Of a DNA stretch of 64,000 nucleotides, positions 524 to 56,560 are shown piece after piece (position 1 is the first letter of the stretch; each line of letters opens with the position of its first letter). The DNA lies in assembly GCF_011386835.1 (NCBI RefSeq), contig NC_088803.1:35154001-35218000 (forward strand), in the 5' to 3' direction. The position numbers and the translations under genes were made by a program. The notes below the pieces were generated by a model, which worked only from the letters and a program-made list of their open reading frames with translations, was not told the origin of the DNA and ran no database searches. Source of the DNA: Chrysemys picta bellii. Taxonomy: Eukaryota.

Positions 524-1279
524 TATGATTCAGTTATTCAAACCACCAAGGTCTAACTTAACAGGAACAATTTTAAGATTCACACGCATAAGTACTTGCA
601 CATTCAGGGAGTCAGGGAACAAAAACAACATTATGAATTATCTAACCAGTCACAAATAACCAGCACTGCTCTAATTTTAAGTATTTGCAAGGAAGTATTC
701 AAAAAGCTACGAGAATAAATACATTTGAGGAGCTTGTGATCTGTTCCTGGATAATCTACAAGTAGAAAAGGCTTAATTCATCATAACTTTAGTTGTAAGG
801 TATTCATTAAGCTATAGTCCCTATATATTAGTCCATGGATACCCATTTTATATCCCCTCTCTTCTGCAGAGAGAGTGTGCCACTCCCAATTACCTTAGGG
901 CTCTACTTACCCCTGACTAGTGAAAGTCAGCTCTGATTATCCCCACTAAACACCCAAGGAAGTGCTCAGTGGTAATCTTATTCAGCCCTCATTAGGGTTG
1001 CTGTTAAGCAGGTCTTGGTCCAGAGGGAAGGCAAAACTTAGGTGATTTATGAATCGTTCCCTCCCAGCATGCTAGTCAAGCTGCCACCCAGTTTGGCAGC
1101 TAAAAGGCTTTACAACAAGAGATCACTTATGTACCAGCAAGAAGATGGTCAACTATTCAGCTTTTTAGAAACACAAACGTCTCCCTGGAATTTAGAGGCA
1201 CCAGGTGTCTAGAGCAAATTCTGTCAAGTGTCTACACTACAGCCTTATTCCGGCCGATGGAAGTGCCCTACTACACTGA

Positions 1280-1950
1280 AAGAACAGGAGTATTTGTGAC
1301 ACCTTAGAGACTAACAAATTTATTTGAGCATAAGCTTTCGTGGGCTACAGCCCACTTCATCAGATGCATAGAATGGAATGTATAGTAAGAAGATATAGAA
1401 ACCTACAGAGAACATGAAAAGGTGAAAGTTGCTATACCAACTTTAAGAGGCTAATTAAGATGAGCTATTATCAGTAGGAGAAAAAAAAAACTTTGTTAGT
1501 CTCTAAGGTGCCACAAGTACTCCTGTTCTTTTTGCGGATACAGACTAACACGGCTGCTACTCTAAAACCATTCCAGACAGTTGACAAGAAGGTGTGAGGA
1601 TACTTAACATGGGGAAATAGACTCAATTTGTGTAATGACCCAGCCACTCCCAGTCTCTATTCAAGCCCAAGTTAATGGCATCTAGTTTGAAAATTAATTC
1701 TAGTTCAGCAGTTTCTTGTTGGAGTCTGTTTTTGAAGCTTTTCTGTTGCAAAATTGCCACCTTTAAGTCTGTTACTGAGTGACCAGAGAGGCTGAAGTGT
1801 TCTCCTACTGGTTTTTTAATGTTACGATTTTTGATGTCAGATTTGTGTCCATTTATTCTTTTGCGTAGAGACTGTCCGGTATGGCCAATGTACATGGCAG
1901 AGGGGGCACTGCTGGCACATGATGGAATATATCACATTGGTAGTCACTTG
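1280..1950 (-). mobile_element. Penelope-like retroelement 3' fragment with GIY-YIG endonuclease and partly inverted terminal repeat
   Basis: The minus frame reads NVIYAIMCQQCPSAMYIGHTGQSLRKRINGH...AELELI (ORF 1623-1895), a GIY-YIG signature. Terminal-repeat sequence at about 1280-1320 recurs inverted at about 1491-1532. Confidence 0.9.
1328..1367 (-). ncRNA. Minimal type I hammerhead ribozyme motif, intact core
   Basis: Minus: GCAU-CUGAUGA-A-GUGGGC(UGUA)GCCCAC-GAAA-GC-UU-AUGC. Confidence 0.8.
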
Positions 1951-14985: not shown

Positions 14986-21983
<6,998 letters not shown>

Positions 21984-22140
21984 CCTCCACACTTCCGCTT
22001 CCGGCCCGCTCACCCAATGGGGAGGCACTTCCGGCACCGACCATCGCGAGCCTGCCGGGAAAGGCGGGGGCGGGTCGAGAGGGTTGCTCAGGGACTTCAA
22101 GCAGAAACGGGGCGGGGCCTTAGTTCAGCCCCGTACCAGC
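21984..22140 (-). promoter_or_regulatory. PIGT CpG-island promoter
   Basis: Tandem ETS/GABP-type sites ACTTCCGCTTCCGG at 21991-22004, CACTTCCGG at 22026-22034, CCAAT at 22014-22018 and a GC box GGGGCGGGGC at 22109-22118. These lie directly upstream of the PIGT ATG in CpG-rich DNA. Confidence 0.75.
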
Positions 22141-22820
22141 AGCGTCCCCGTTGCCGCGGTGACCCTGAGTCCCCCAGCGCGCATGACGGGGTCTGGCGCG
22201 GCCGCGGGGGGGCACAGGCGCGACACACGTGCCTGTCGCGGGGCGCGCGCCGCTGCACCCCCTGGGCTTGGCCTCTCGCGCAGGGAGTTGGACCCATGTG
22301 GCTCGTCCCTTTCACAGCCCCCCATACACACTAGCACAGGGGGCGCTGCGGGCAGCTCCGGGTCTGCACGCCGCTCTCCTCAGCGGGGAGTCCCCGCTCT
22401 GGCCTGATCAGCCCTTGGGGCCGGGGAGCCCGGTTAGTGTTGCTTTCAGTGGGACATGGGCCCACCGAGAACTGACAGGACGGCGACCCACCAAGGGCCT
22501 CACGCGGGCCATGGGGCAGCGACAGAGGGGGGGCTTTGGGTCACCTTCCAGCCTGCTCTGGGACTGGACTGGATCTGATGCAGTGCCTTAGGTGCAAAAT
22601 GCTCCTTATCTTATTCCCTGCCCCGAGCTAGTTAGTACCCCTAACCTAGAGTCACACTGGAACTTGTTCCCTAGAGGTGAAGGCCTCTGGACCCCGTTGC
22701 CTAACTGCAAAGACAGATTCTCTGGCCTGTCCCAGTTCTGTGGAGTTGTCACCTTTCTTAGCTATGGATATTTTTTTGGGGTGGGGTGGGGTGGAATATA
22801 AATCAACATCTGTTTTTCAA

Positions 22821-23032
22821 AAAGAATAGGAGTACTTGTGGCACCTTAGAGACTAACAAATTTATTAGAGCATAAGCTTTCGTGGGCTACAACCCACTTC
22901 TTCGGATGCATCCGAAGAAGTGGGTTGTAGCCCACGAAAGCTTATGCTCTAATAAATTTGTTAGTCTCTAAGGTGCCACAAGTACTCCTATTCTTTTTGA
23001 GGATACAGACTAACACCGCTGCTACCCTGAAA
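22821..23032. mobile_element. Penelope-like terminal-repeat insertion forming a perfect palindrome
   Basis: 10-bp direct repeat TGTTTTTCAA at 22811-22820 and 23033-23042; 92-bp arms 22817-22908 and 22909-23000 are exact reverse complements. Confidence 0.9.
22870..22947. ncRNA. Two back-to-back hammerhead motifs (22870-22909 minus, 22908-22947 plus) with variant core CCGAAGA
   Basis: Each strand reads GCAU-CCGAAGA-A-GUGGGU(UGUA)GCCCAC-GAAA-GC-UU-AUGC. Confidence 0.7.
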
Positions 23033-24431
23033 TGTTTTTCAAGGTGATAGAACATGGATTATCCTGTGAAAATGAGTATTTTCTGATATCATATCAGAGC
23101 CAACTGGGGTCCATCTAAACCAGTGGCTTGTCTCTGACAGTGGCCTGTAGTAGATACTTTTGCAGTTGCTAAAAACACACAATAGACAGTTATGTAATAA
23201 TTTGCCCAAAGAGGAAGTTGCTTCCTAATACTGAAAGCTAATCATGGTGTCTGCTGTGAAGCTGGAAGGTTTATATTCTATAGACATGTTTACCTTAATA
23301 TATATATGGATATACATCCACCTAAGCACCTCTGAAAGCTGTGTAGGTAACTGAGTGCAGATGCCAGAGTCCATCAGTAGGAACAGGGTGTACTCTCCAC
23401 TTTGCCTTGCTTTTTTATAAATTTTTTTTACATGAAGGTAATGGCATGGAAATTCCAGTTCTAGGAGTGTGTTTGGGTTTTTAGGGCCTTTGTCACTTGC
23501 TGTCTAACATTCTACTGCTTGCTGCTGTGGCCAATATATCTGTGGTTTAGCACTGGGATTACTTGTCTAATGAATATCCTCCGGGCACCGTGTCCCTGGG
23601 TTTTGAAATCTGTTGAAAATCTCATTCTGGAGCTGTCAGTATGGATGACAGCAGACCTGACCACTTCCCTCAGCACTGAACAGATGGAGCGATAAAGCAG
23701 ATTCTGACCCTGGCAAACTTTCCCTTGTTTGAAGGGCTTGGTTAACAGGCTTATTGGCAGTTATTTAATTTCTTGTGGAGCTGGGATGTTGAGTTTGTTG
23801 CACTGTACAAGTGCCGGCACTTTTTGCTCTCTGTGCCAGTGTGAAACAACATCTCACCAGGCCTACTCTGCGAGAACATGTTCTTATTTTCTACAGGGGC
23901 TGTGTAGGCAATCATGTTTAATTCCTGCACTCATTTTTAATGTCTAATTACATTCCCCACTAGAGGGCAGACACGACACACATTTGAACCTGAAATTTTA
24001 TTGAACCATTAACCCCATGACTACATTGCAATCTCCTCAGAGTTAATGGATTATACAACACAGGGCAGGTTTAGCATCTCACTAAGAATAGTCTGACCTG
24101 CCTATCGGAGCATGGTGCAGCCTTTCAGCAAAGCTTTAACATATGCTAAAGAGCAGGATCTTACATTATAGGGTAGACACAGTGCAAGAGACCCCCCCGG
24201 TCCTGCCCTGCTTATCCTTAACTATATATAAAAGCTAATCACATCAGTTTGTATCTCAGTCTCTCAGCCAGATAAGCAGCCAAGACAAAGTGCTGTGGTT
24301 TTTCCCAGTAGATGTGTATGTAAAAAATCATTCCTAAAATACCACAGTCCAAACTTGTATCATTTCTGCCATTTCCAATGTCTGGGGCATATGCTGAATT
24401 CCAGAGTTCCCAAATGAACAAAGATAATGAA

Positions 24432-25148
24432 TGAGGCTGCGAGTCTGTCACGGTGGTCACGGATTCCATGACTTTCTGTGACCTCTGTGACTTCTGCAGC
24501 GGTTGGTGCTGGCTCAGGGGCTTCCCAAGCCGGGCAGCCCCTGGGCCAGCAGCAGCACTTTGGGTGTGTGGGAGGGGGCTCAGGGCTAGGGGCAGGCATT
24601 GGGAGGAGCGGGGGGCGCATACCTTGGGGCGAGGGGGCTCCCGGCTCCCACTGGCATGGCCCTGCAGCTTCTAGGTGATGGAAGAGCCAGGGGGCTCCGC
24701 ACGCTGCCCGCAGGCACTGCCCTCTCAGCTCCCATTGGCTGTGGTTCCCAGCCAATGGGAGCTGCGCAGCCGGCACTTGTGGCGGGAGCAGCGTGCGGAG
24801 CTCCCTGGCCCCTCCGCCGCCTAGGAGCTGCAGGGACATGCAAAGTTGGGTAGGTAGCCTGACAGCCCCACCAACCCCCCACCTCCTTCCCCCCCAGCAC
24901 CAGCAGGGATCCCGGGCTGTGCATTGCTGTCCCCCCCAGAACCAGTGGGGGTCCTGGGCCACCTCCCCCAGCACCCATGGCACCCCCCGGACCGCCTCCC
25001 CCAGAGCACCCATGGCCCCCTGCCCAAGTTTTAGTTAGGGGTATACAGTAAAGGTCATGGACAGGTCACAGGCTGTGAATTTTTGTTTGCTGCCCATGAC
25101 CTGTCCATGACTTTTACTAAAACTACCCATGACTAAAACGTACCCTTA
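24432..25148. mobile_element. hAT-type non-autonomous DNA transposon
   Basis: 8-bp TSD ATAATGAA (24424-24431 and 25149-25156). Termini and subterminal sequence are shared with 32617-33348. Confidence 0.85.
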
Positions 25149-36600: not shown

Positions 36601-39600
36601 GGACTCTTCATGAACGGTATTCGGTATTCCAGCCAATCCTCAACTCCTCCGTGACTCCACACTAAAAATATCCCCACAGCCCAGAGCTCTCTCCCCAGGA
36701 GAGGCCACGTCACAAGACCCTGCTATTTACAGGGCCTGATTCACTTGACATAGAACCCTGAGCAGGATAAAGCCAGGAGCGCATTCGGGAAGATGAGAGG
36801 AGGTGGGGAGGCTCATAAGCCACACAGGGGATGTCTACATAGCCCAAGGCAGCGAACCTCCCAGCCCAGGTCGACAGACCCGAGCTACAGGAGCTCGCGC
36901 TAGTGCTCTAACAATAGCGTTGTAGACAGCGCTGTGAAGTTGCAGCACGAACTGGAGCTCGGGCTCTGAAGCCTAGGGATGGGGATGGTCTTCACAGTCC
37001 AAGCTCCAGCACAAGCCACAACTTCGAAGTGCTGCCCACCCAGCTATTTTTAGAGCACTCAGGTGAGTCCTGCTAGCCGGCGTCTGTCGACCTGGGCTGG
37101 GAAGCTCGCTGCTGCAGGTGCATGGACAGGCAGCCTCCACACCATGTTCACACTGAAGCTTTTCCAAGTCCTGCTGAGAGGCTCATTAAAGGAGCTGGGA
37201 TACCACCCTGTCTCTCCTCCCCAGCTTGGCCTGGCTGTGCAGAGACCTTCACTGACTCACTGTCTGCTCGGCTCCATGGAGCTTCTCTATCCGGAACACA
37301 TGCTGCTTCAGGGGTTTGCTCCTGTCCTAAGTTCCACAGGTGACAGGGAGAGCTGGCTCATTACAAAAGCAGTTTTGCCTCTCCTGGAATGGACACCTCC
37401 TCATCTATTATTGGGAGTGGACTACATCCACCCTGATCGAGTTGGCCCTGTCAATACTGGTTCTCCACTTGTGAGGTAACTCCCTTCTCTTCGTGTGTCA
37501 TTATATACTGCCTGCATCTGTAATTTTCACTCCATGCATCTGAAGAAGTGGGGTTTCTACCCACGAAAGCTTATGCTCAAATAAATCTGTTAGTCTTTAA
37601 GGTGCCACTGGACTCCTTGTTGTTTTTGTGGATACAGACTAACATGGCTACCCCCTGATAAGGGAGAGCTTTGCCGATCCGGATCAGACAATGGCCCAGC
37701 CAGCTCTGGGCCCGGTTTCTGGCAAAGGTCAGTGCCTGATGCTTCACAGGAAAGCAGCCTGCACCCCCACCAAAAGGAATGCCCCCAGCTGAAGGGCACA
37801 TCCCATAGGGCAAGCCTTTCCTACCACCCAGCAGCTTGAGATGTGACTGCCTGGATCTCAGCATGTAGAACTACTACTGATATTACAATGGGATGTGAAA
37901 GGATGGAGGCACCAATCACCCTGGGGCATATGGGAAGAGCGACTTCAGGTGAGGCTGGTGCATGGTGACTGCGAGATGGAGGCAGGGGGTTGGTGGCTGT
38001 GCAGAGGTGAGCAGCCAGGAAATAGGGATTGTAGAGCTGAGGGCTTTGGTGAGGGAGCTGCTGCTTGGTGGGGTGGAGAGGTGCCCTGCGTGGGGGGGGG
38101 GGGGTGGAGAGGAGCTGGTGGGTGGGTTGTGTGGGGTGTATGAAGAGATGTGGGAAGGCACTGGCAAAAGGGCGCTATAGGGTGTATGGAGGGATGTGGG
38201 AAGGCGCTGGCGGAAGGGCACTATGGAGTGTATGGAGGGATGTGGGAGGGCACTGGTGTACAGGTTGTATGGCAGAATTCTGTGGGGAAGGACAGAGAAG
38301 GGCTATGCCCAGGGGAGGAGAGGGCTGTAGTGTCCATGGGACCATTGGTGGGGGGTGCTCTGCCTGGTGCCTGTTCACAGCATGGTTTGCGGCTGCTGCC
38401 TGTGGAGTCTATGTTGCTCCAGCCGGGGCCTGGCGGCAGCTTCCGAAGATGAGCCAGAGCTAAAGAATTCACTAAAAAAGGAAAGGGTTCAGAGAGTCGT
38501 GTGCCGGGGGCAAGGCATGGGGGAGCAGAGCGCCACTGGGTTAGCACTTCCACACGGATAAAACCCCAACTCCCTCCGTCAGTCAGTACCTTTGTGTACA
38601 TGTACACACACACAGACACACACAGAGGGGACTGACACAGACAGAACACAGGGAGGCGTCTAGACTAAACTGTGGCTGAGCAGTAATTGCTCAAGTTTGA
38701 CTGTAAATTTACAGAACAAACATTTGGCTGAGAGAGATGCAGCCAGTGCAAGGCTGACCCAGGTGTGGCTGAGTGGGTGTGCAATGTAATTGTGTGAGAG
38801 AAGGAGCGAGTGGGTGTAGGTGAAAGTTGTGTGAAACAGACGGGAAGTGTGTGTGAGTCACGGGTGACGGCCAGTGCCTGTGCCCATGATATATGACACT
38901 TTGGGGACGGGGGTGAATCAGCCGGTTTCTGTACAATAGTCAGGATTGTTCTGGGCTGTTGACCACTGCAAGATAATTGTGAATCCCTAAACTCAGTGTT
39001 TTAAGTGGCTTGGGAAAATAGGGTGGGGGGAAGGGCTTTTATGACAATCCCAGCTGCAATAAATGTTCATGCACGGGAAGGGCAGTGCTTTCACCCTTTG
39101 TGAGCTGACTCAGTTTTAATTCTTTTTTGCCGGGACTGTGACCGATGGCGACCCTGCCCACTTTAAGTCCCCCTGAGCTGGGCCCACGAAAGAGCTGCAG
39201 TGTCAGCAGTGTGCCCCCCTCCTGCGGGAGGCTGCCCAGGCAGGAGGCAGCTGCTGTCTGTGTGCGTGGGTGAGCGGGCACTGGCCTCCGGCTGGCGGTA
39301 GTGACTGTGCCGGGGATGCAGTTGGGATACAGGGGGTTGCTCCAAGCCCCGCTCAGTGCAGCGGGCATCAGGAGCGTGCCCTCAGCCTCACGTGGGTCTC
39401 AACCCTGGGGCGCTGTCCGGGCCAGGGAGGGTCCCTGCTGGGGAACATTAGAGCCCTGGAGCAGAGAGTGCACCGGAGGGGGAGAGGACGCCTCCTGCCC
39501 GGTCCTGCACATGTCCCTCCACGCCTGCTCCCGGACAGTCAGCGGCAGGGTGATCCCACCACCGAGCCAGGGCGGGACCCTCGCCGGGCAAATAACCACC

Positions 39601-45320: not shown

Positions 45321-45646
45321 AGCCCATGCCATAGGGGAGGAAGACTAGGCCTTAGCCTCCCCTCTGCTGAGAGCACCAGCCCATGCCATAGGGGAGGATG
45401 GATTTTGTGATGTAGGCAGCTGCAGAGAGCCACCTTTCACACAGGGGTCATCACCAACCACTAGATGGCAGTGACTTCCCAGGGCTAGCGTGGAACTGAT
45501 GGGCTATCCAAAAAGGGCTCTTGCTGCCTTCCTCAATCCCTGAGCCACCTAGTCCATCTCAGTTAACACATTATTACTGTAGAGGCCTTTATCATGGACC
45601 AGGATCCCATTGTTCCAGGTGCTGTACAAACACAGAACAAAGGGAG

Positions 45647-46150
45647 GTTTCAGAGTAGCAGCCGTGTTAGTCTGTATCTGCAAAAAGAACAGGAGTACTT
45701 GTGGCACCTTAGAGACTAACAAATTTATTTGAGCATAAGCTTTCGTGGGCTACAGCCCACTTCATTGGATGCATAGAATGGAACATATAGTAAGGAGATA
45801 TATATACACATACAGAGAACATGAAAAGGTGGGAGTTGCCCTACCAACTCTAAGAGGCTAATTAATTAAGAGAAAAAACTTTTACAGTGATAATCAAGAT
45901 AGCCCATTACAGACAGCTTGACAAGAAGGTGTGAAGATACTTAACATGGGGAAATAGATTCAATGTGTATAATGGCTCAGCCATTCCTAGTCTCTATTCA
46001 AACCCAAATTGATGGTATCTAGTTTGCATGTCAGTTCAAGTTCAGCAGTTTCTCCTTGGAGTCTGTTTTTGAAGCTTTTCTGTTGCAAAACTGCCACCTT
46101 TAAGTCTGTTACTGAGTGACCAGAGAGGTTGAAGTGTTCTCCTACTGGGT
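45647..46150 (-). mobile_element. Penelope-like retroelement 3' fragment (GIY-YIG C-terminus plus terminal repeat)
   Basis: The minus frame reads PVGEHFNLSGHSVTDLKVAVLQQKSFKNRLQGETAELEL, nearly identical to the 1623-1895 ORF. The hammerhead-type repeat at 45733-45772 has a mutated core CCAAUGA. Confidence 0.9.
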
Positions 46151-55008: not shown

Positions 55009-56349
55009 CAGTGTCTGTTCCTTGTAAGCTTCCAGACGCTGGCTTTCGACTGAAGAGAAAATCTCTGGCATCCCCCTGTAACTTTCTCTCCTAGGCATTG
55101 AGTCACTGCGACTTTCTCTCCCCTAGCCAGGCTGGATCCTTCTTAATCCTGTCAATGGCCAGAGGGAGTCACTGCAGAGACAGCTGAGGTGCTTCCCCCG
55201 CATCTTGCTGCCTGTGCACTGCCACGATTCCTAGCCCTTGCTGGCCCTGGGAAGCTGGAGATTGAATGAGGGACCTAACCTGGAATCGTCTATGCAGCAG
55301 CATGACGAGCGGCAGCTGGACTAGCATGGGGGTCCCCTCTTCTATAGATTCTTATACCCCACTCCTCACCACAGTATCGAAGCACCTAGAATTTTCATCC
55401 CCCCCCCCCAGCCATGGTGTCAGGGGAATTTGAACCCAGCCACGCTAGCAATACAAGCAAGAGCTGTGCCCCGAGGCCACTTTTAATACTTTTCTGTTTT
55501 CCTTCCATAGCTAGACACTCTTGTCTCAGCCACTCAGCACAGACGGGGCAGGGCAAATTGGGTCAATCCAGTGCAGAGCTTGTAGGTGTCTCCTTGAATT
55601 CTTTGCTGAGGTTATTCCCAATAACGGCAGTGCCTGACCCATGTCATCAGTTGGGCCTATTCTTATCTCAGTACTCATTATATAGAACCATACATACGCA
55701 GGGCACTTTGCCAGTCTAGTAAAGACAATCTCTGCCATGTAGGGCTCACATTCGAAGTCTGCTCTTCTTGATTGTGAGTAACACATCGCCCCTAACAGAA
55801 TACATTCCCTCCCCAGGTAGGAGGTCACCCCACAGTAACAGGACCTTCCCCCCTTTGATGAAGTCCCATCATTCCCATCAACACTAATAGGATTATGACG
55901 GATATAATTATCATCCGCATTAGCTCTGTCCCAGCATGAAGCATGCAGATTCCAAGGCGGATAAGCAGCTAAGCTACCCTCTCGCTCTGGGTTGGTGTTT
56001 AGGCCTAGAGAAACCCCAATCACTGCACTCGATGATACTTCTCTCTAGAGAAACAGCACCGATGTTTGTTTTCCTTTCAGGGCTTGCAGATGTTCTGAGC
56101 TGGGCAGACACTGAGATGAGGTTTCGAGAGAAAGATCAGCTGAGTGATGCACTGATCCATAATTCTACAAATAAAGGGAATAATCTGCATCCTTCAGACA
56201 CAAAATGTGTCTCTAGCATTTGTCAAAGTGGGAGCTGATTGGATTGAGTTTGGCAAAGGTGGCCAAAGGTGTAGTTTCCACCTCCCTTGCATTCACAGCA
56301 ATGCAGATCTCTGAAGAGTGGGCTGGAATGAACACTCTGGTTGTTGACA

Positions 56350-56560
56350 GGTTTCAGAGCGGTAGCCGTGTTAGTCTGTATCAGCAAAAACAACGAGGAG
56401 TCCTTGTGGCACCTTAGAGACTAACAAATTTATTTGGGCATAAGCTTTCGTGGGCTAAAACCCACTTCATCAGATGCATGGAGTGGAAAATACAGTAGGG
56501 AGGTATAAATACACAGCATATGAAAAGATGGGAGTTGCCTTACCAAGTGGGGGGGGTCAA
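56350..56560 (-). mobile_element. Penelope-like terminal repeat fragment
   Basis: Same repeat family as 1280 and 45647. Confidence 0.85.
56438..56477 (-). ncRNA. Minimal hammerhead ribozyme motif, intact core
   Basis: Minus: GCAU-CUGAUGA-A-GUGGGU(UUUA)GCCCAC-GAAA-GC-UU-AUGC. Confidence 0.8.

What the first reader, a model, noticed from the sequence alone, without database searches (positions are those of the whole stretch)
22817..23000. Perfect 184-bp spacerless palindrome made of two back-to-back hammerhead motifs, just upstream of PIGT
Seen: the 92-bp arms are exact reverse complements and share variants that differ from other copies in the window (CCGAAGA core, GGTTGTAG loop, CTAATAAA, CCTATT). 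The centre ATGCAT is the shared stem I strand of both ribozymes, and a 10-bp direct repeat flanks the insertion. Inference: this is a fold-back or template-switch product at the ribozyme boundary during Penelope-like element integration, either very recent or homogenised between arms. It could extrude a cruciform or give a 92-bp dsRNA hairpin about 0.7 kb from the PIGT promoter. The U4C core change may reduce cleavage.
Basis: partly seen in the sequence, partly recalled or inferred. Interest (0 to 1): 0.75.

Follow-up and report, generated by a model that had tools for sequence, protein, structure and literature searches.

The report
Penelope retroelement fold-back insertion near PIGT
The perfect 184-bp palindrome is real, but it is one ordinary, dead, 212-bp insertion of a very abundant turtle Penelope-like retroelement, laid down as two inverted end-pieces in the way these elements are already known to insert.

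Summary
Observation confirmed. Positions 22817-23000 form a 92+92 bp palindrome, 100% complementary, with no spacer.

Each arm carries a minimal Penelope-type hammerhead motif, and ATGCAT lies at the centre.

The 10-bp repeat TGTTTTTCAA is a true target-site duplication. A contig from a related organism (G) skips exactly 22811-23032, which is the empty site. Contigs from organisms A and D cross both junctions, and one from C crosses the right junction.

The real unit is a 212-bp insertion, 22821-23032:
- an inverted arm without the 32-nt "tail";
- a direct arm with the tail.

This matches two published descriptions: the known Penelope habit of an inverted 5'-truncated copy plus a 30-40 bp tail at one end only (PMC8557442), and the in-vitro finding that a Penelope protein extends both DNA strands from two adjacent start sites (PMC11167929).

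Best reading: both target strands primed cDNA, and the two cDNAs annealed at the palindromic ATGCAT.

"Very recent or homogenised" is not needed. The insertion is shared by at least three organism labels, and zero arm differences has a probability of about 0.2-0.3 under neutrality.

C at core position 4 recurs in one other copy in the window (c45700). Cruciform, dsRNA and PIGT effects are untested.

This scan has noted many such fold-backs elsewhere in this genome. Interest is low.

The parts
22811..22820 (+). Left copy of the 10-bp target-site duplication TGTTTTTCAA. Its last 4 nt (TCAA) also pair with TTGA at 22997-23000, which is microhomology with the element at the inverted arm's outer end.
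   Evidence: D5, record 19 of run X14 joins 22810 to 23033, so the empty site holds a single copy
22821..22908 (-). Inverted arm: the Penelope-like element's 3' region, from helix I of the hammerhead to the proximal end site. It lacks the 32-nt tail.
   Evidence: left junction crossed by contigs of organisms A (record 7) and D (record 11)
22906..22911 (.). Central palindromic hexamer ATGCAT. This is the join of the two arms and holds the 5' strand of helix I (GCAT) for the motif on each strand.
22909..23000 (+). Direct arm: the same element region in sense orientation, with the minimal hammerhead at 22908-22951 (core CCGAAGA, helix II 6 bp, GAA-AGCU-U, helix I GCAT/ATGC).
23001..23032 (+). The 32-nt tail, present on the direct arm only. 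It runs to the element's distal end site (...CTGAAA).
   Evidence: right junction crossed by contigs of A (record 8), C (record 31) and D (record 16); tail concept from PMC8557442 and PMC11167929
23033..23042 (+). Right copy of the target-site duplication TGTTTTTCAA.
   Evidence: D5, record 19

Best explanation
This is a single, dead-on-arrival insertion of the 3' end of a high-copy Penelope-like retroelement. It was made by target-primed reverse transcription on both strands of a staggered 10-bp cut.

Inferred steps:
1. The bottom-strand end primed cDNA at the element's distal start site. That cDNA therefore includes the 32-nt tail.
2. The top-strand end (...TCAA) primed a second cDNA at the proximal start site, helped by 4 nt of pairing with UUGA. 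That cDNA has no tail.
3. Both cDNAs copied the same 88 nt through the hammerhead, from two RNAs of one source or from two repeat units of a tandem transcript.
4. Their identical 3' ends, finishing in the self-complementary ATGCAT, annealed to each other and were filled in. This gave a spacerless perfect palindrome.

What is shown and what is inferred:
- Shown: the anatomy, the empty site, the tail asymmetry and the two microhomologies.
- Inferred: the priming and annealing steps, resting on published in-vitro behaviour of an anole Penelope protein.

The copy has no coding capacity. Its ribozyme core carries C at position 4, and in a transcript the 92-bp hairpin would out-compete the ribozyme fold. 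It most likely does nothing.
For: - Perfect palindrome.
- Arms align with four other copies of the family in the window at 83-95% identity.
- All minimal-hammerhead features described for Penelope elements are present (against PMC4209133).
- Precise empty site in organism G, and filled junctions in A and D and at the right junction in C.
- The tail is on one arm only. This is the published pattern of an inverted 5'-truncated copy plus a 30-40 bp tail at one end (PMC8557442).
- Purified anole Penelope protein cleaves and extends both strands, starts reverse transcription at two adjacent internal sites, and the tail equals the stretch between those sites (PMC11167929).
- The second composite in the window (1279-1458 inverted and tail-less, 1490-1567 direct with tail) has the same asymmetry but a different junction.
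- Contigs of all four genomes end at 22819-22821 and, in X14, at 23032, with unrelated flanks. Both end sites therefore recur (table 7).
Against: - No direct observation of the mechanism.
- The in-vitro work reports initiation without homology to the cut DNA, so the TCAA overlap may be chance.
- It is unexplained why both cDNAs ended exactly at ATGCAT rather than elsewhere.
- Classical twin priming gives non-overlapping segments, whereas here the arms duplicate the same 88 nt.
- The link of this repeat family to a reverse transcriptase/GIY-YIG ORF was not tested here.
- The central 144 bp rests on the reference assembly alone.
Confidence: 0.68

Rival explanations
1. Snap-back of a single cDNA. 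The bottom-strand-primed cDNA reached ATGCAT, folded back on itself, copied 88-92 nt of its own sequence, and was then joined to the upstream target through the TCAA microhomology.
For: - Spacerless perfect palindrome centred on a self-complementary hexamer.
- Arms share every variant.
- 4-nt microhomology at the left junction.
Against: - It gives no reason for the self-copy to stop just before the tail, yet the stop matches the other inverted arm in the window within 3-4 nt and a recurrent terminus in four genomes.
- A hairpin with a 0-4 nt loop is a poor primer.
Confidence: 0.15
2. Inherited palindrome. The whole 212-bp unit was copied from a master locus that already had the fold-back, so nothing special happened at this site.
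For: - The arms share five variants absent from the other copies in the window.
- Earlier notes of this scan report many fold-backs of the family.
Against: - It needs reverse transcription straight through a 92-bp perfect RNA hairpin.
- It also needs a 5' end falling exactly on the master's left boundary.
- No second copy with these variants is in the window.
Confidence: 0.07
3. Later rearrangement or arm-to-arm gene conversion. An ordinary imperfect inverted insertion was made perfect afterwards by hairpin-templated repair between the arms.
For: Zero differences in 92 bp although the insertion predates the split of organisms A and D.
Against: Zero differences is expected by chance about 17-32% of the time at the measured flank divergence, so no extra process is required. 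There is no positive sign of conversion.
Confidence: 0.06
4. Assembly artefact. The centre of the palindrome is collapsed or mis-joined in the reference.
For: No independent contig could be assigned to 22847-22990. Penelope structures are known to trouble short-read assemblies (PMC8557442).
Against: - Both junctions, with the arm-specific variants and opposite arm orientations, are crossed by contigs from other samples of organism A and from organism D.
- The outgroup has a precise empty site with one repeat copy.
- Different unique flanks on the two sides rule out a fold-back read chimera.
Confidence: 0.04

Closest known systems
Penelope-like element insertions with an inverted 5'-truncated copy and a one-sided 30-40 bp tail (Evgen'ev & Arkhipova 2005; Craig et al. 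2021, PMC8557442)
   Same: - An inverted truncated copy abuts a direct copy.
- The tail (32 nt here) is at one end only.
- The hammerhead lies in the terminal repeat.
- Heavy 5' truncation and a target-site duplication.
   Different: - Both copies here are truncated at the same nucleotide, so the result is a spacerless perfect palindrome of only 184 bp.
- No ORF and no pseudo-LTR pair.
In-vitro integration by the anole Poseidon element PAc (Frangieh et al. 2024, PMC11167929)
   Same: - Two end sites 32-36 nt apart, downstream of the hammerhead, equal the tail.
- One arm uses each site, as expected if both target strands are extended.
- AT-rich target.
- A stem-loop lies at the start sites.
   Different: - This is a turtle family whose protein was not identified here.
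- A 4-nt primer-template overlap is seen, whereas the paper reports none.
- This is an in-vivo end product, not an assay.
L1 twin priming (Ostertag & Kazazian 2001; cited from my own knowledge)
   Same: - An inverted 5' segment joined to a direct 3' segment inside one target-site duplication.
- Microhomology at the junctions.
   Different: - In L1 the two segments come from adjacent, largely non-overlapping parts of one RNA, and priming is at poly(A).
- Here the arms duplicate the same 88 nt, and priming is at internal, element-specific sites.
Minimal hammerhead ribozymes of Penelope-like elements (Cervera & de la Pena 2014, PMC4209133; dimer cleavage reviewed in PMC6765202)
   Same: - Type I layout and a 6-bp helix II.
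- An extra base between positions 9 and 10.1.
- A G10.1-C11.1 pair.
- No loop 3, with a palindromic AGCU in place of helix III.
- Turtles are named in that paper.
   Different: - This copy has C at core position 4 and A at the variable position 7.
- The motifs are head-to-head on opposite strands, not in tandem, so they cannot form the tandem dimer on one transcript.

Membership tests
Penelope-like element insertion | Hammerhead motif in the terminal repeat region | tested here: met
   full minimal hammerhead parse in both arms and in four other copies
Penelope-like element insertion | 30-40 bp tail present at only one end of the insertion unit | tested here: met
   32 nt (23001-23032) on the direct arm only; definition from PMC8557442
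Penelope-like element insertion | Inverted 5'-truncated copy adjacent to the direct copy | tested here: met
Penelope-like element insertion | Single insertion event flanked by a target-site duplication | tested here: met
   run X14 record 19 skips 22811-23032 exactly; D5
Penelope-like element insertion | Family linked to an ORF with telomerase-like RT and GIY-YIG endonuclease | not tested
   No such ORF lies next to any copy in the window. No eukaryotic genome collection was on hand.
Minimal hammerhead ribozyme (PLE type) | Conserved core C3 U4 G5 A6 N7 G8 A9 ... G12 A13 A14 | tested here: not met
   the core is CCGAAGA, with C at position 4. Positions 12-14 are intact. Copies c1300 and c56400 have the canonical CTGATGA.
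Minimal hammerhead ribozyme (PLE type) | Extra base between 9 and 10.1, G10.1-C11.1 pair, 6-bp helix II | tested here: met
   against PMC4209133
Minimal hammerhead ribozyme (PLE type) | Palindromic 15.1-16.1 (AGCU) with no loop 3; helix I pairs | tested here: met
   A-GC-U, helix I GCAT/ATGC 4 bp; folds
Minimal hammerhead ribozyme (PLE type) | Self-cleavage | not testable with these tools
   Needs an in-vitro assay. Published PLE motifs cleave poorly even as dimers (PMC4209133).
Rfam hammerhead families | Score at or above the gathering threshold | tested here: not met
   no hammerhead model matched, even at E up to 10. This is expected, because the motif has no helix III hairpin.
L1-type twin priming | Inverted and direct segments derive from adjacent, non-overlapping parts of the RNA | tested here: not met
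   both arms cover the same element positions (query about 127-220)
miRNA family mir-4861 (RF03846) | Score at or above the gathering threshold (100 bits) | tested here: not met
   45 bits, with a 99-nt insertion in the loop

The most novel reading that the evidence does not exclude
The shared stop at ATGCAT may not be an accident of microhomology. It could mark a real boundary of the template, either the 5' end of the element's transcript or the point where two template RNAs are held together in a dimeric RNP. In that case ATGCAT-centred spacerless palindromes would recur genome-wide and would record symmetric, two-template integration by a dimeric Penelope enzyme in vivo.
Probability: 0.1. 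Interest if true: 0.5.

Novelty: already known. Interest (0 to 1): 0.2.

Why it matters
It matters little on its own. It is one more dead copy of a repeat present in very many copies.

Its modest value is as a clean natural example, with an empty site in a relative, of the end product predicted by the 2024 in-vitro model. That model proposes that Penelope elements prime on both DNA strands from two start sites.

A genome-wide census of such fold-backs (arm end sites and turning points) could test the model in vivo.

No evidence ties the palindrome to PIGT regulation.

Tried and rejected
- Rfam, whole window at gathering thresholds and the region at E up to 10: no hammerhead family matched. There were only sub-threshold miRNA-type hits that any long hairpin attracts.
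- Independent check of the palindrome's centre with read laying: it failed because thousands of contigs from other copies pile on the arms.
- Joints listed inside the arms (table 5): I do not use them as evidence for other turning points. The tail contains a near-copy of a 12-mer of the arm (D2/I4), which makes such placements ambiguous.
- Search for an RT/endonuclease ORF beside the longer copies: none found.
- Literature on mir-4861: it did not say which animal the miRNA comes from.
- Covariation in the 3' stem-loop: the stem is invariant in five copies, so it says nothing either way.
- A genome-wide count of ATGCAT-centred palindromes could not be run, because no collection of this genome is searchable.
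- Whether the stretch is transcribed could not be settled.

Full report
**1.

- The repeat finder reports arms 22817-22908 and 22909-23000, 92 nt each, 100% complementary, with nothing between them. A script confirms the identity and shows that the symmetry stops exactly there.
- The centre reads GGATGCATCC.
- As single-stranded DNA the stretch folds into one hairpin of -117.7 kcal/mol, against -22 for shuffles. Chance cannot produce this.
- A 10-bp direct repeat, TGTTTTTCAA, lies at 22811-22820 and 23033-23042 (D5).

**2. What the arms are**

- A 30-nt word from the arm occurs six times in the window.
- BLAST with the longest copy finds seven arms of one repeat family: 1279-1458 (-), 1485-1569 (+), the two arms here, 37525-37649 (+), 45640-45900 (-) and 56349-56546 (-).
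- The aligned copies all end in the same way: a hammerhead-like motif, about 85 nt of conserved sequence, then a further 32-36 nt ending in CTGAAAC.

A position-by-position parse shows the same layout in every copy:
- helix I, GCAT/ATGC;
- a 7-nt core;
- one extra base;
- a 6-bp helix II starting G and ending C;
- GAA;
- then A-GC-U-U with no loop 3.

These are the features listed for the minimal hammerheads of Penelope-like elements: a base between positions 9 and 10.1, a G10.1-C11.1 pair, a long helix II and a palindromic 15.2-16.2. That paper names turtles among the hosts (PMC4209133). Such motifs are thought to act only as dimers through the palindromic helix III (PMC6765202).

Rfam's hammerhead models do not score these motifs at all. 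That fits the missing helix III hairpin.

I did not test that.

**3. The core of this copy**

- The core is CCGAAGA, so C replaces U at position 4 and A sits at the variable position 7.
- Two copies in the window have the canonical CTGATGA. One has CTGAAGA and one has CCAATGA.
- The last of these also carries C4, so C4 recurs in a second copy in this window.
- Established hammerhead biochemistry treats position 4 as conserved and position 7 as free. That is my own knowledge, not tested here.

**4. It is one insertion event**

I laid Logan contigs of four runs, from four organism labels, on 22400-23500.

| Run (organism) | Contig evidence | Site state |
|---|---|---|
| X14 (G) | One 381-nt contig (record 19) covers 22536-22810 and continues without a break at 23033-23138. 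It skips exactly 222 bp, which is one repeat copy plus the insert. | Empty |
| X1 (A) | Record 7 crosses the left junction (22782-22846, no mismatch). Record 8 crosses the right junction (22991-23500). | Filled |
| X10 (D) | Records 11 and 16 cross both junctions. | Filled |
| X6 (C) | Record 31 crosses the right junction. | Filled on the right |

- The 10-bp repeat is therefore a target-site duplication.
- The insert is 22821-23032, 212 bp.
- Both arm orientations are confirmed outside the reference assembly.
- The middle 144 bp could not be checked, because thousands of contigs from other copies lie there.

**5. Age**

- Counting substitutions in the 879 bp of unique flank (table 3) gives about 0.6% for C, 1.25% for D and 1.9% for G, each against the window.
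- The insertion is shared by A, C and D and absent from G.
- The two arms have therefore diverged for at least the A-D distance.
- The expected number of differences between the arms is 1.15-1.75, and the probability of none is 0.32-0.17.
- The perfect identity needs neither extreme youth nor homogenisation, though conversion is not excluded.

**6. The anatomy is asymmetric in an informative way**

- The direct arm runs on for 32 nt beyond the palindrome, to the family's usual end. The inverted arm does not.
- The inverted arm's outer end falls at query position about 220. The other inverted arm in the window ends at 217 and also lacks those 32-36 nt.
- Contigs from all four genomes stop matching at 22819-22821 and, in X14, at 23032, with unrelated sequence beyond (table 7). 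Both positions are therefore recurrent ends of the family.

Two papers describe this pattern:
- Craig et al. state that Penelope insertions often have an inverted 5'-truncated copy immediately adjacent, and a 30-40 bp tail at only one end (PMC8557442).
- Frangieh et al. purified an anole Penelope protein. They found that it cleaves and extends both DNA strands, that reverse transcription starts at two adjacent internal sites, and that the tail is the stretch between those sites (PMC11167929).

**7. Most likely mechanism**

1. A staggered cut is made 10 bp apart.
2. The bottom strand primes at the distal site, so this arm has the tail.
3. The top strand, ending ...TCAA, primes at the proximal site, where the RNA reads UUGA. 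This gives 4 nt of possible pairing and an arm without the tail.
4. Both cDNAs copy the same 88 nt.
5. Both end in ATGCAT, which is self-complementary, so the two 3' ends can anneal and be filled in. The result is a spacerless palindrome.

Two RNAs of one source, or two units of a tandem transcript, would explain why the arms share all five variants.

The anatomy, the empty site and the microhomologies are shown. The priming and annealing are inferred.

Two points remain open. It is unexplained why both cDNAs stopped at that hexamer. The second composite in the window joins elsewhere, with an A10 filler. Earlier notes of this scan describe fold-backs of this family turning at the cleavage site, in the catalytic box, or around captured DNA, so the turning point is not fixed.

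**8. Rivals**

- A snap-back of one cDNA explains the palindrome but not the tail-less stop.
- An inherited palindrome needs reverse transcription through a 92-bp RNA hairpin and a lucky 5' end.
- Gene conversion is unnecessary.
- An assembly artefact is made unlikely by the junction contigs and the empty site.

**9. Setting**

- PIGT lies on the minus strand. Gpi16 exons are at 21367-21612, 20277-20540 and 19307-19567, with a probable first coding exon whose ATG is near 21983.
- A CpG-rich block spans about 21400-22600.
- Nothing here shows an effect on PIGT. Cruciform extrusion and a dsRNA hairpin remain possibilities only.
- RNA-labelled runs hold a quarter of the words of the 1.1-kb stretch, but I could not find out which part.

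**10. Verdict**

This is a real and neatly documented example of a known Penelope habit, and not a new kind of element. This scan has already noted many such fold-backs on other DNA of this genome.

Noticed in passing
window 1270-1569: A second inverted-plus-direct composite of the same family. The inverted, tail-less arm is at 1279-1458, an A10 filler sits near 1480-1489, and a short direct arm with the tail is at 1490-1567. The junction is not at ATGCAT.
   Followed up: partly
window 22814-23003: Rfam mir-4861 (RF03846) matches the whole palindrome at 45 bits (E 1e-8, gathering score 100). It shares several words with the arms, so that miRNA family might itself derive from a Penelope fold-back in another animal.
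   Followed up: partly
window 22959-23015 (and the same region of four other copies): An invariant 9-bp stem (UGUUAGUCU with AGACUAACA) encloses the proximal end site and precedes the distal one. It resembles the AC-rich stem-loop where the anole element starts reverse transcription. There is no covariation, so it is unproven.
   Followed up: partly
window 24400-25000: A second CpG-rich block (GC 0.65-0.70) lies about 1.4 kb beyond the palindrome, on the far side from PIGT. The gene was not identified.
   Followed up: no
window 22780-22796: A (GGGGT)3 microsatellite lies 15 bp left of the target site. Penelope clades are reported to favour microsatellites and AT-rich DNA.
   Followed up: no
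window 23055: Organism D (run X10) has a 12-bp deletion just right of the insertion. Organisms A and C show a GG insertion at 22526.
   Followed up: no
window 37525-37649: A more diverged copy (83%) of a related subfamily. Its core is CTGAAGA and its helix II is altered (GTGGGG ... ACCCAC), and it has no inverted partner.
   Followed up: partly
window 22400-23500: Four RNA-labelled runs of organism A hold 24-30% of the sampled words of this stretch. Which part is transcribed is unknown.
   Followed up: no
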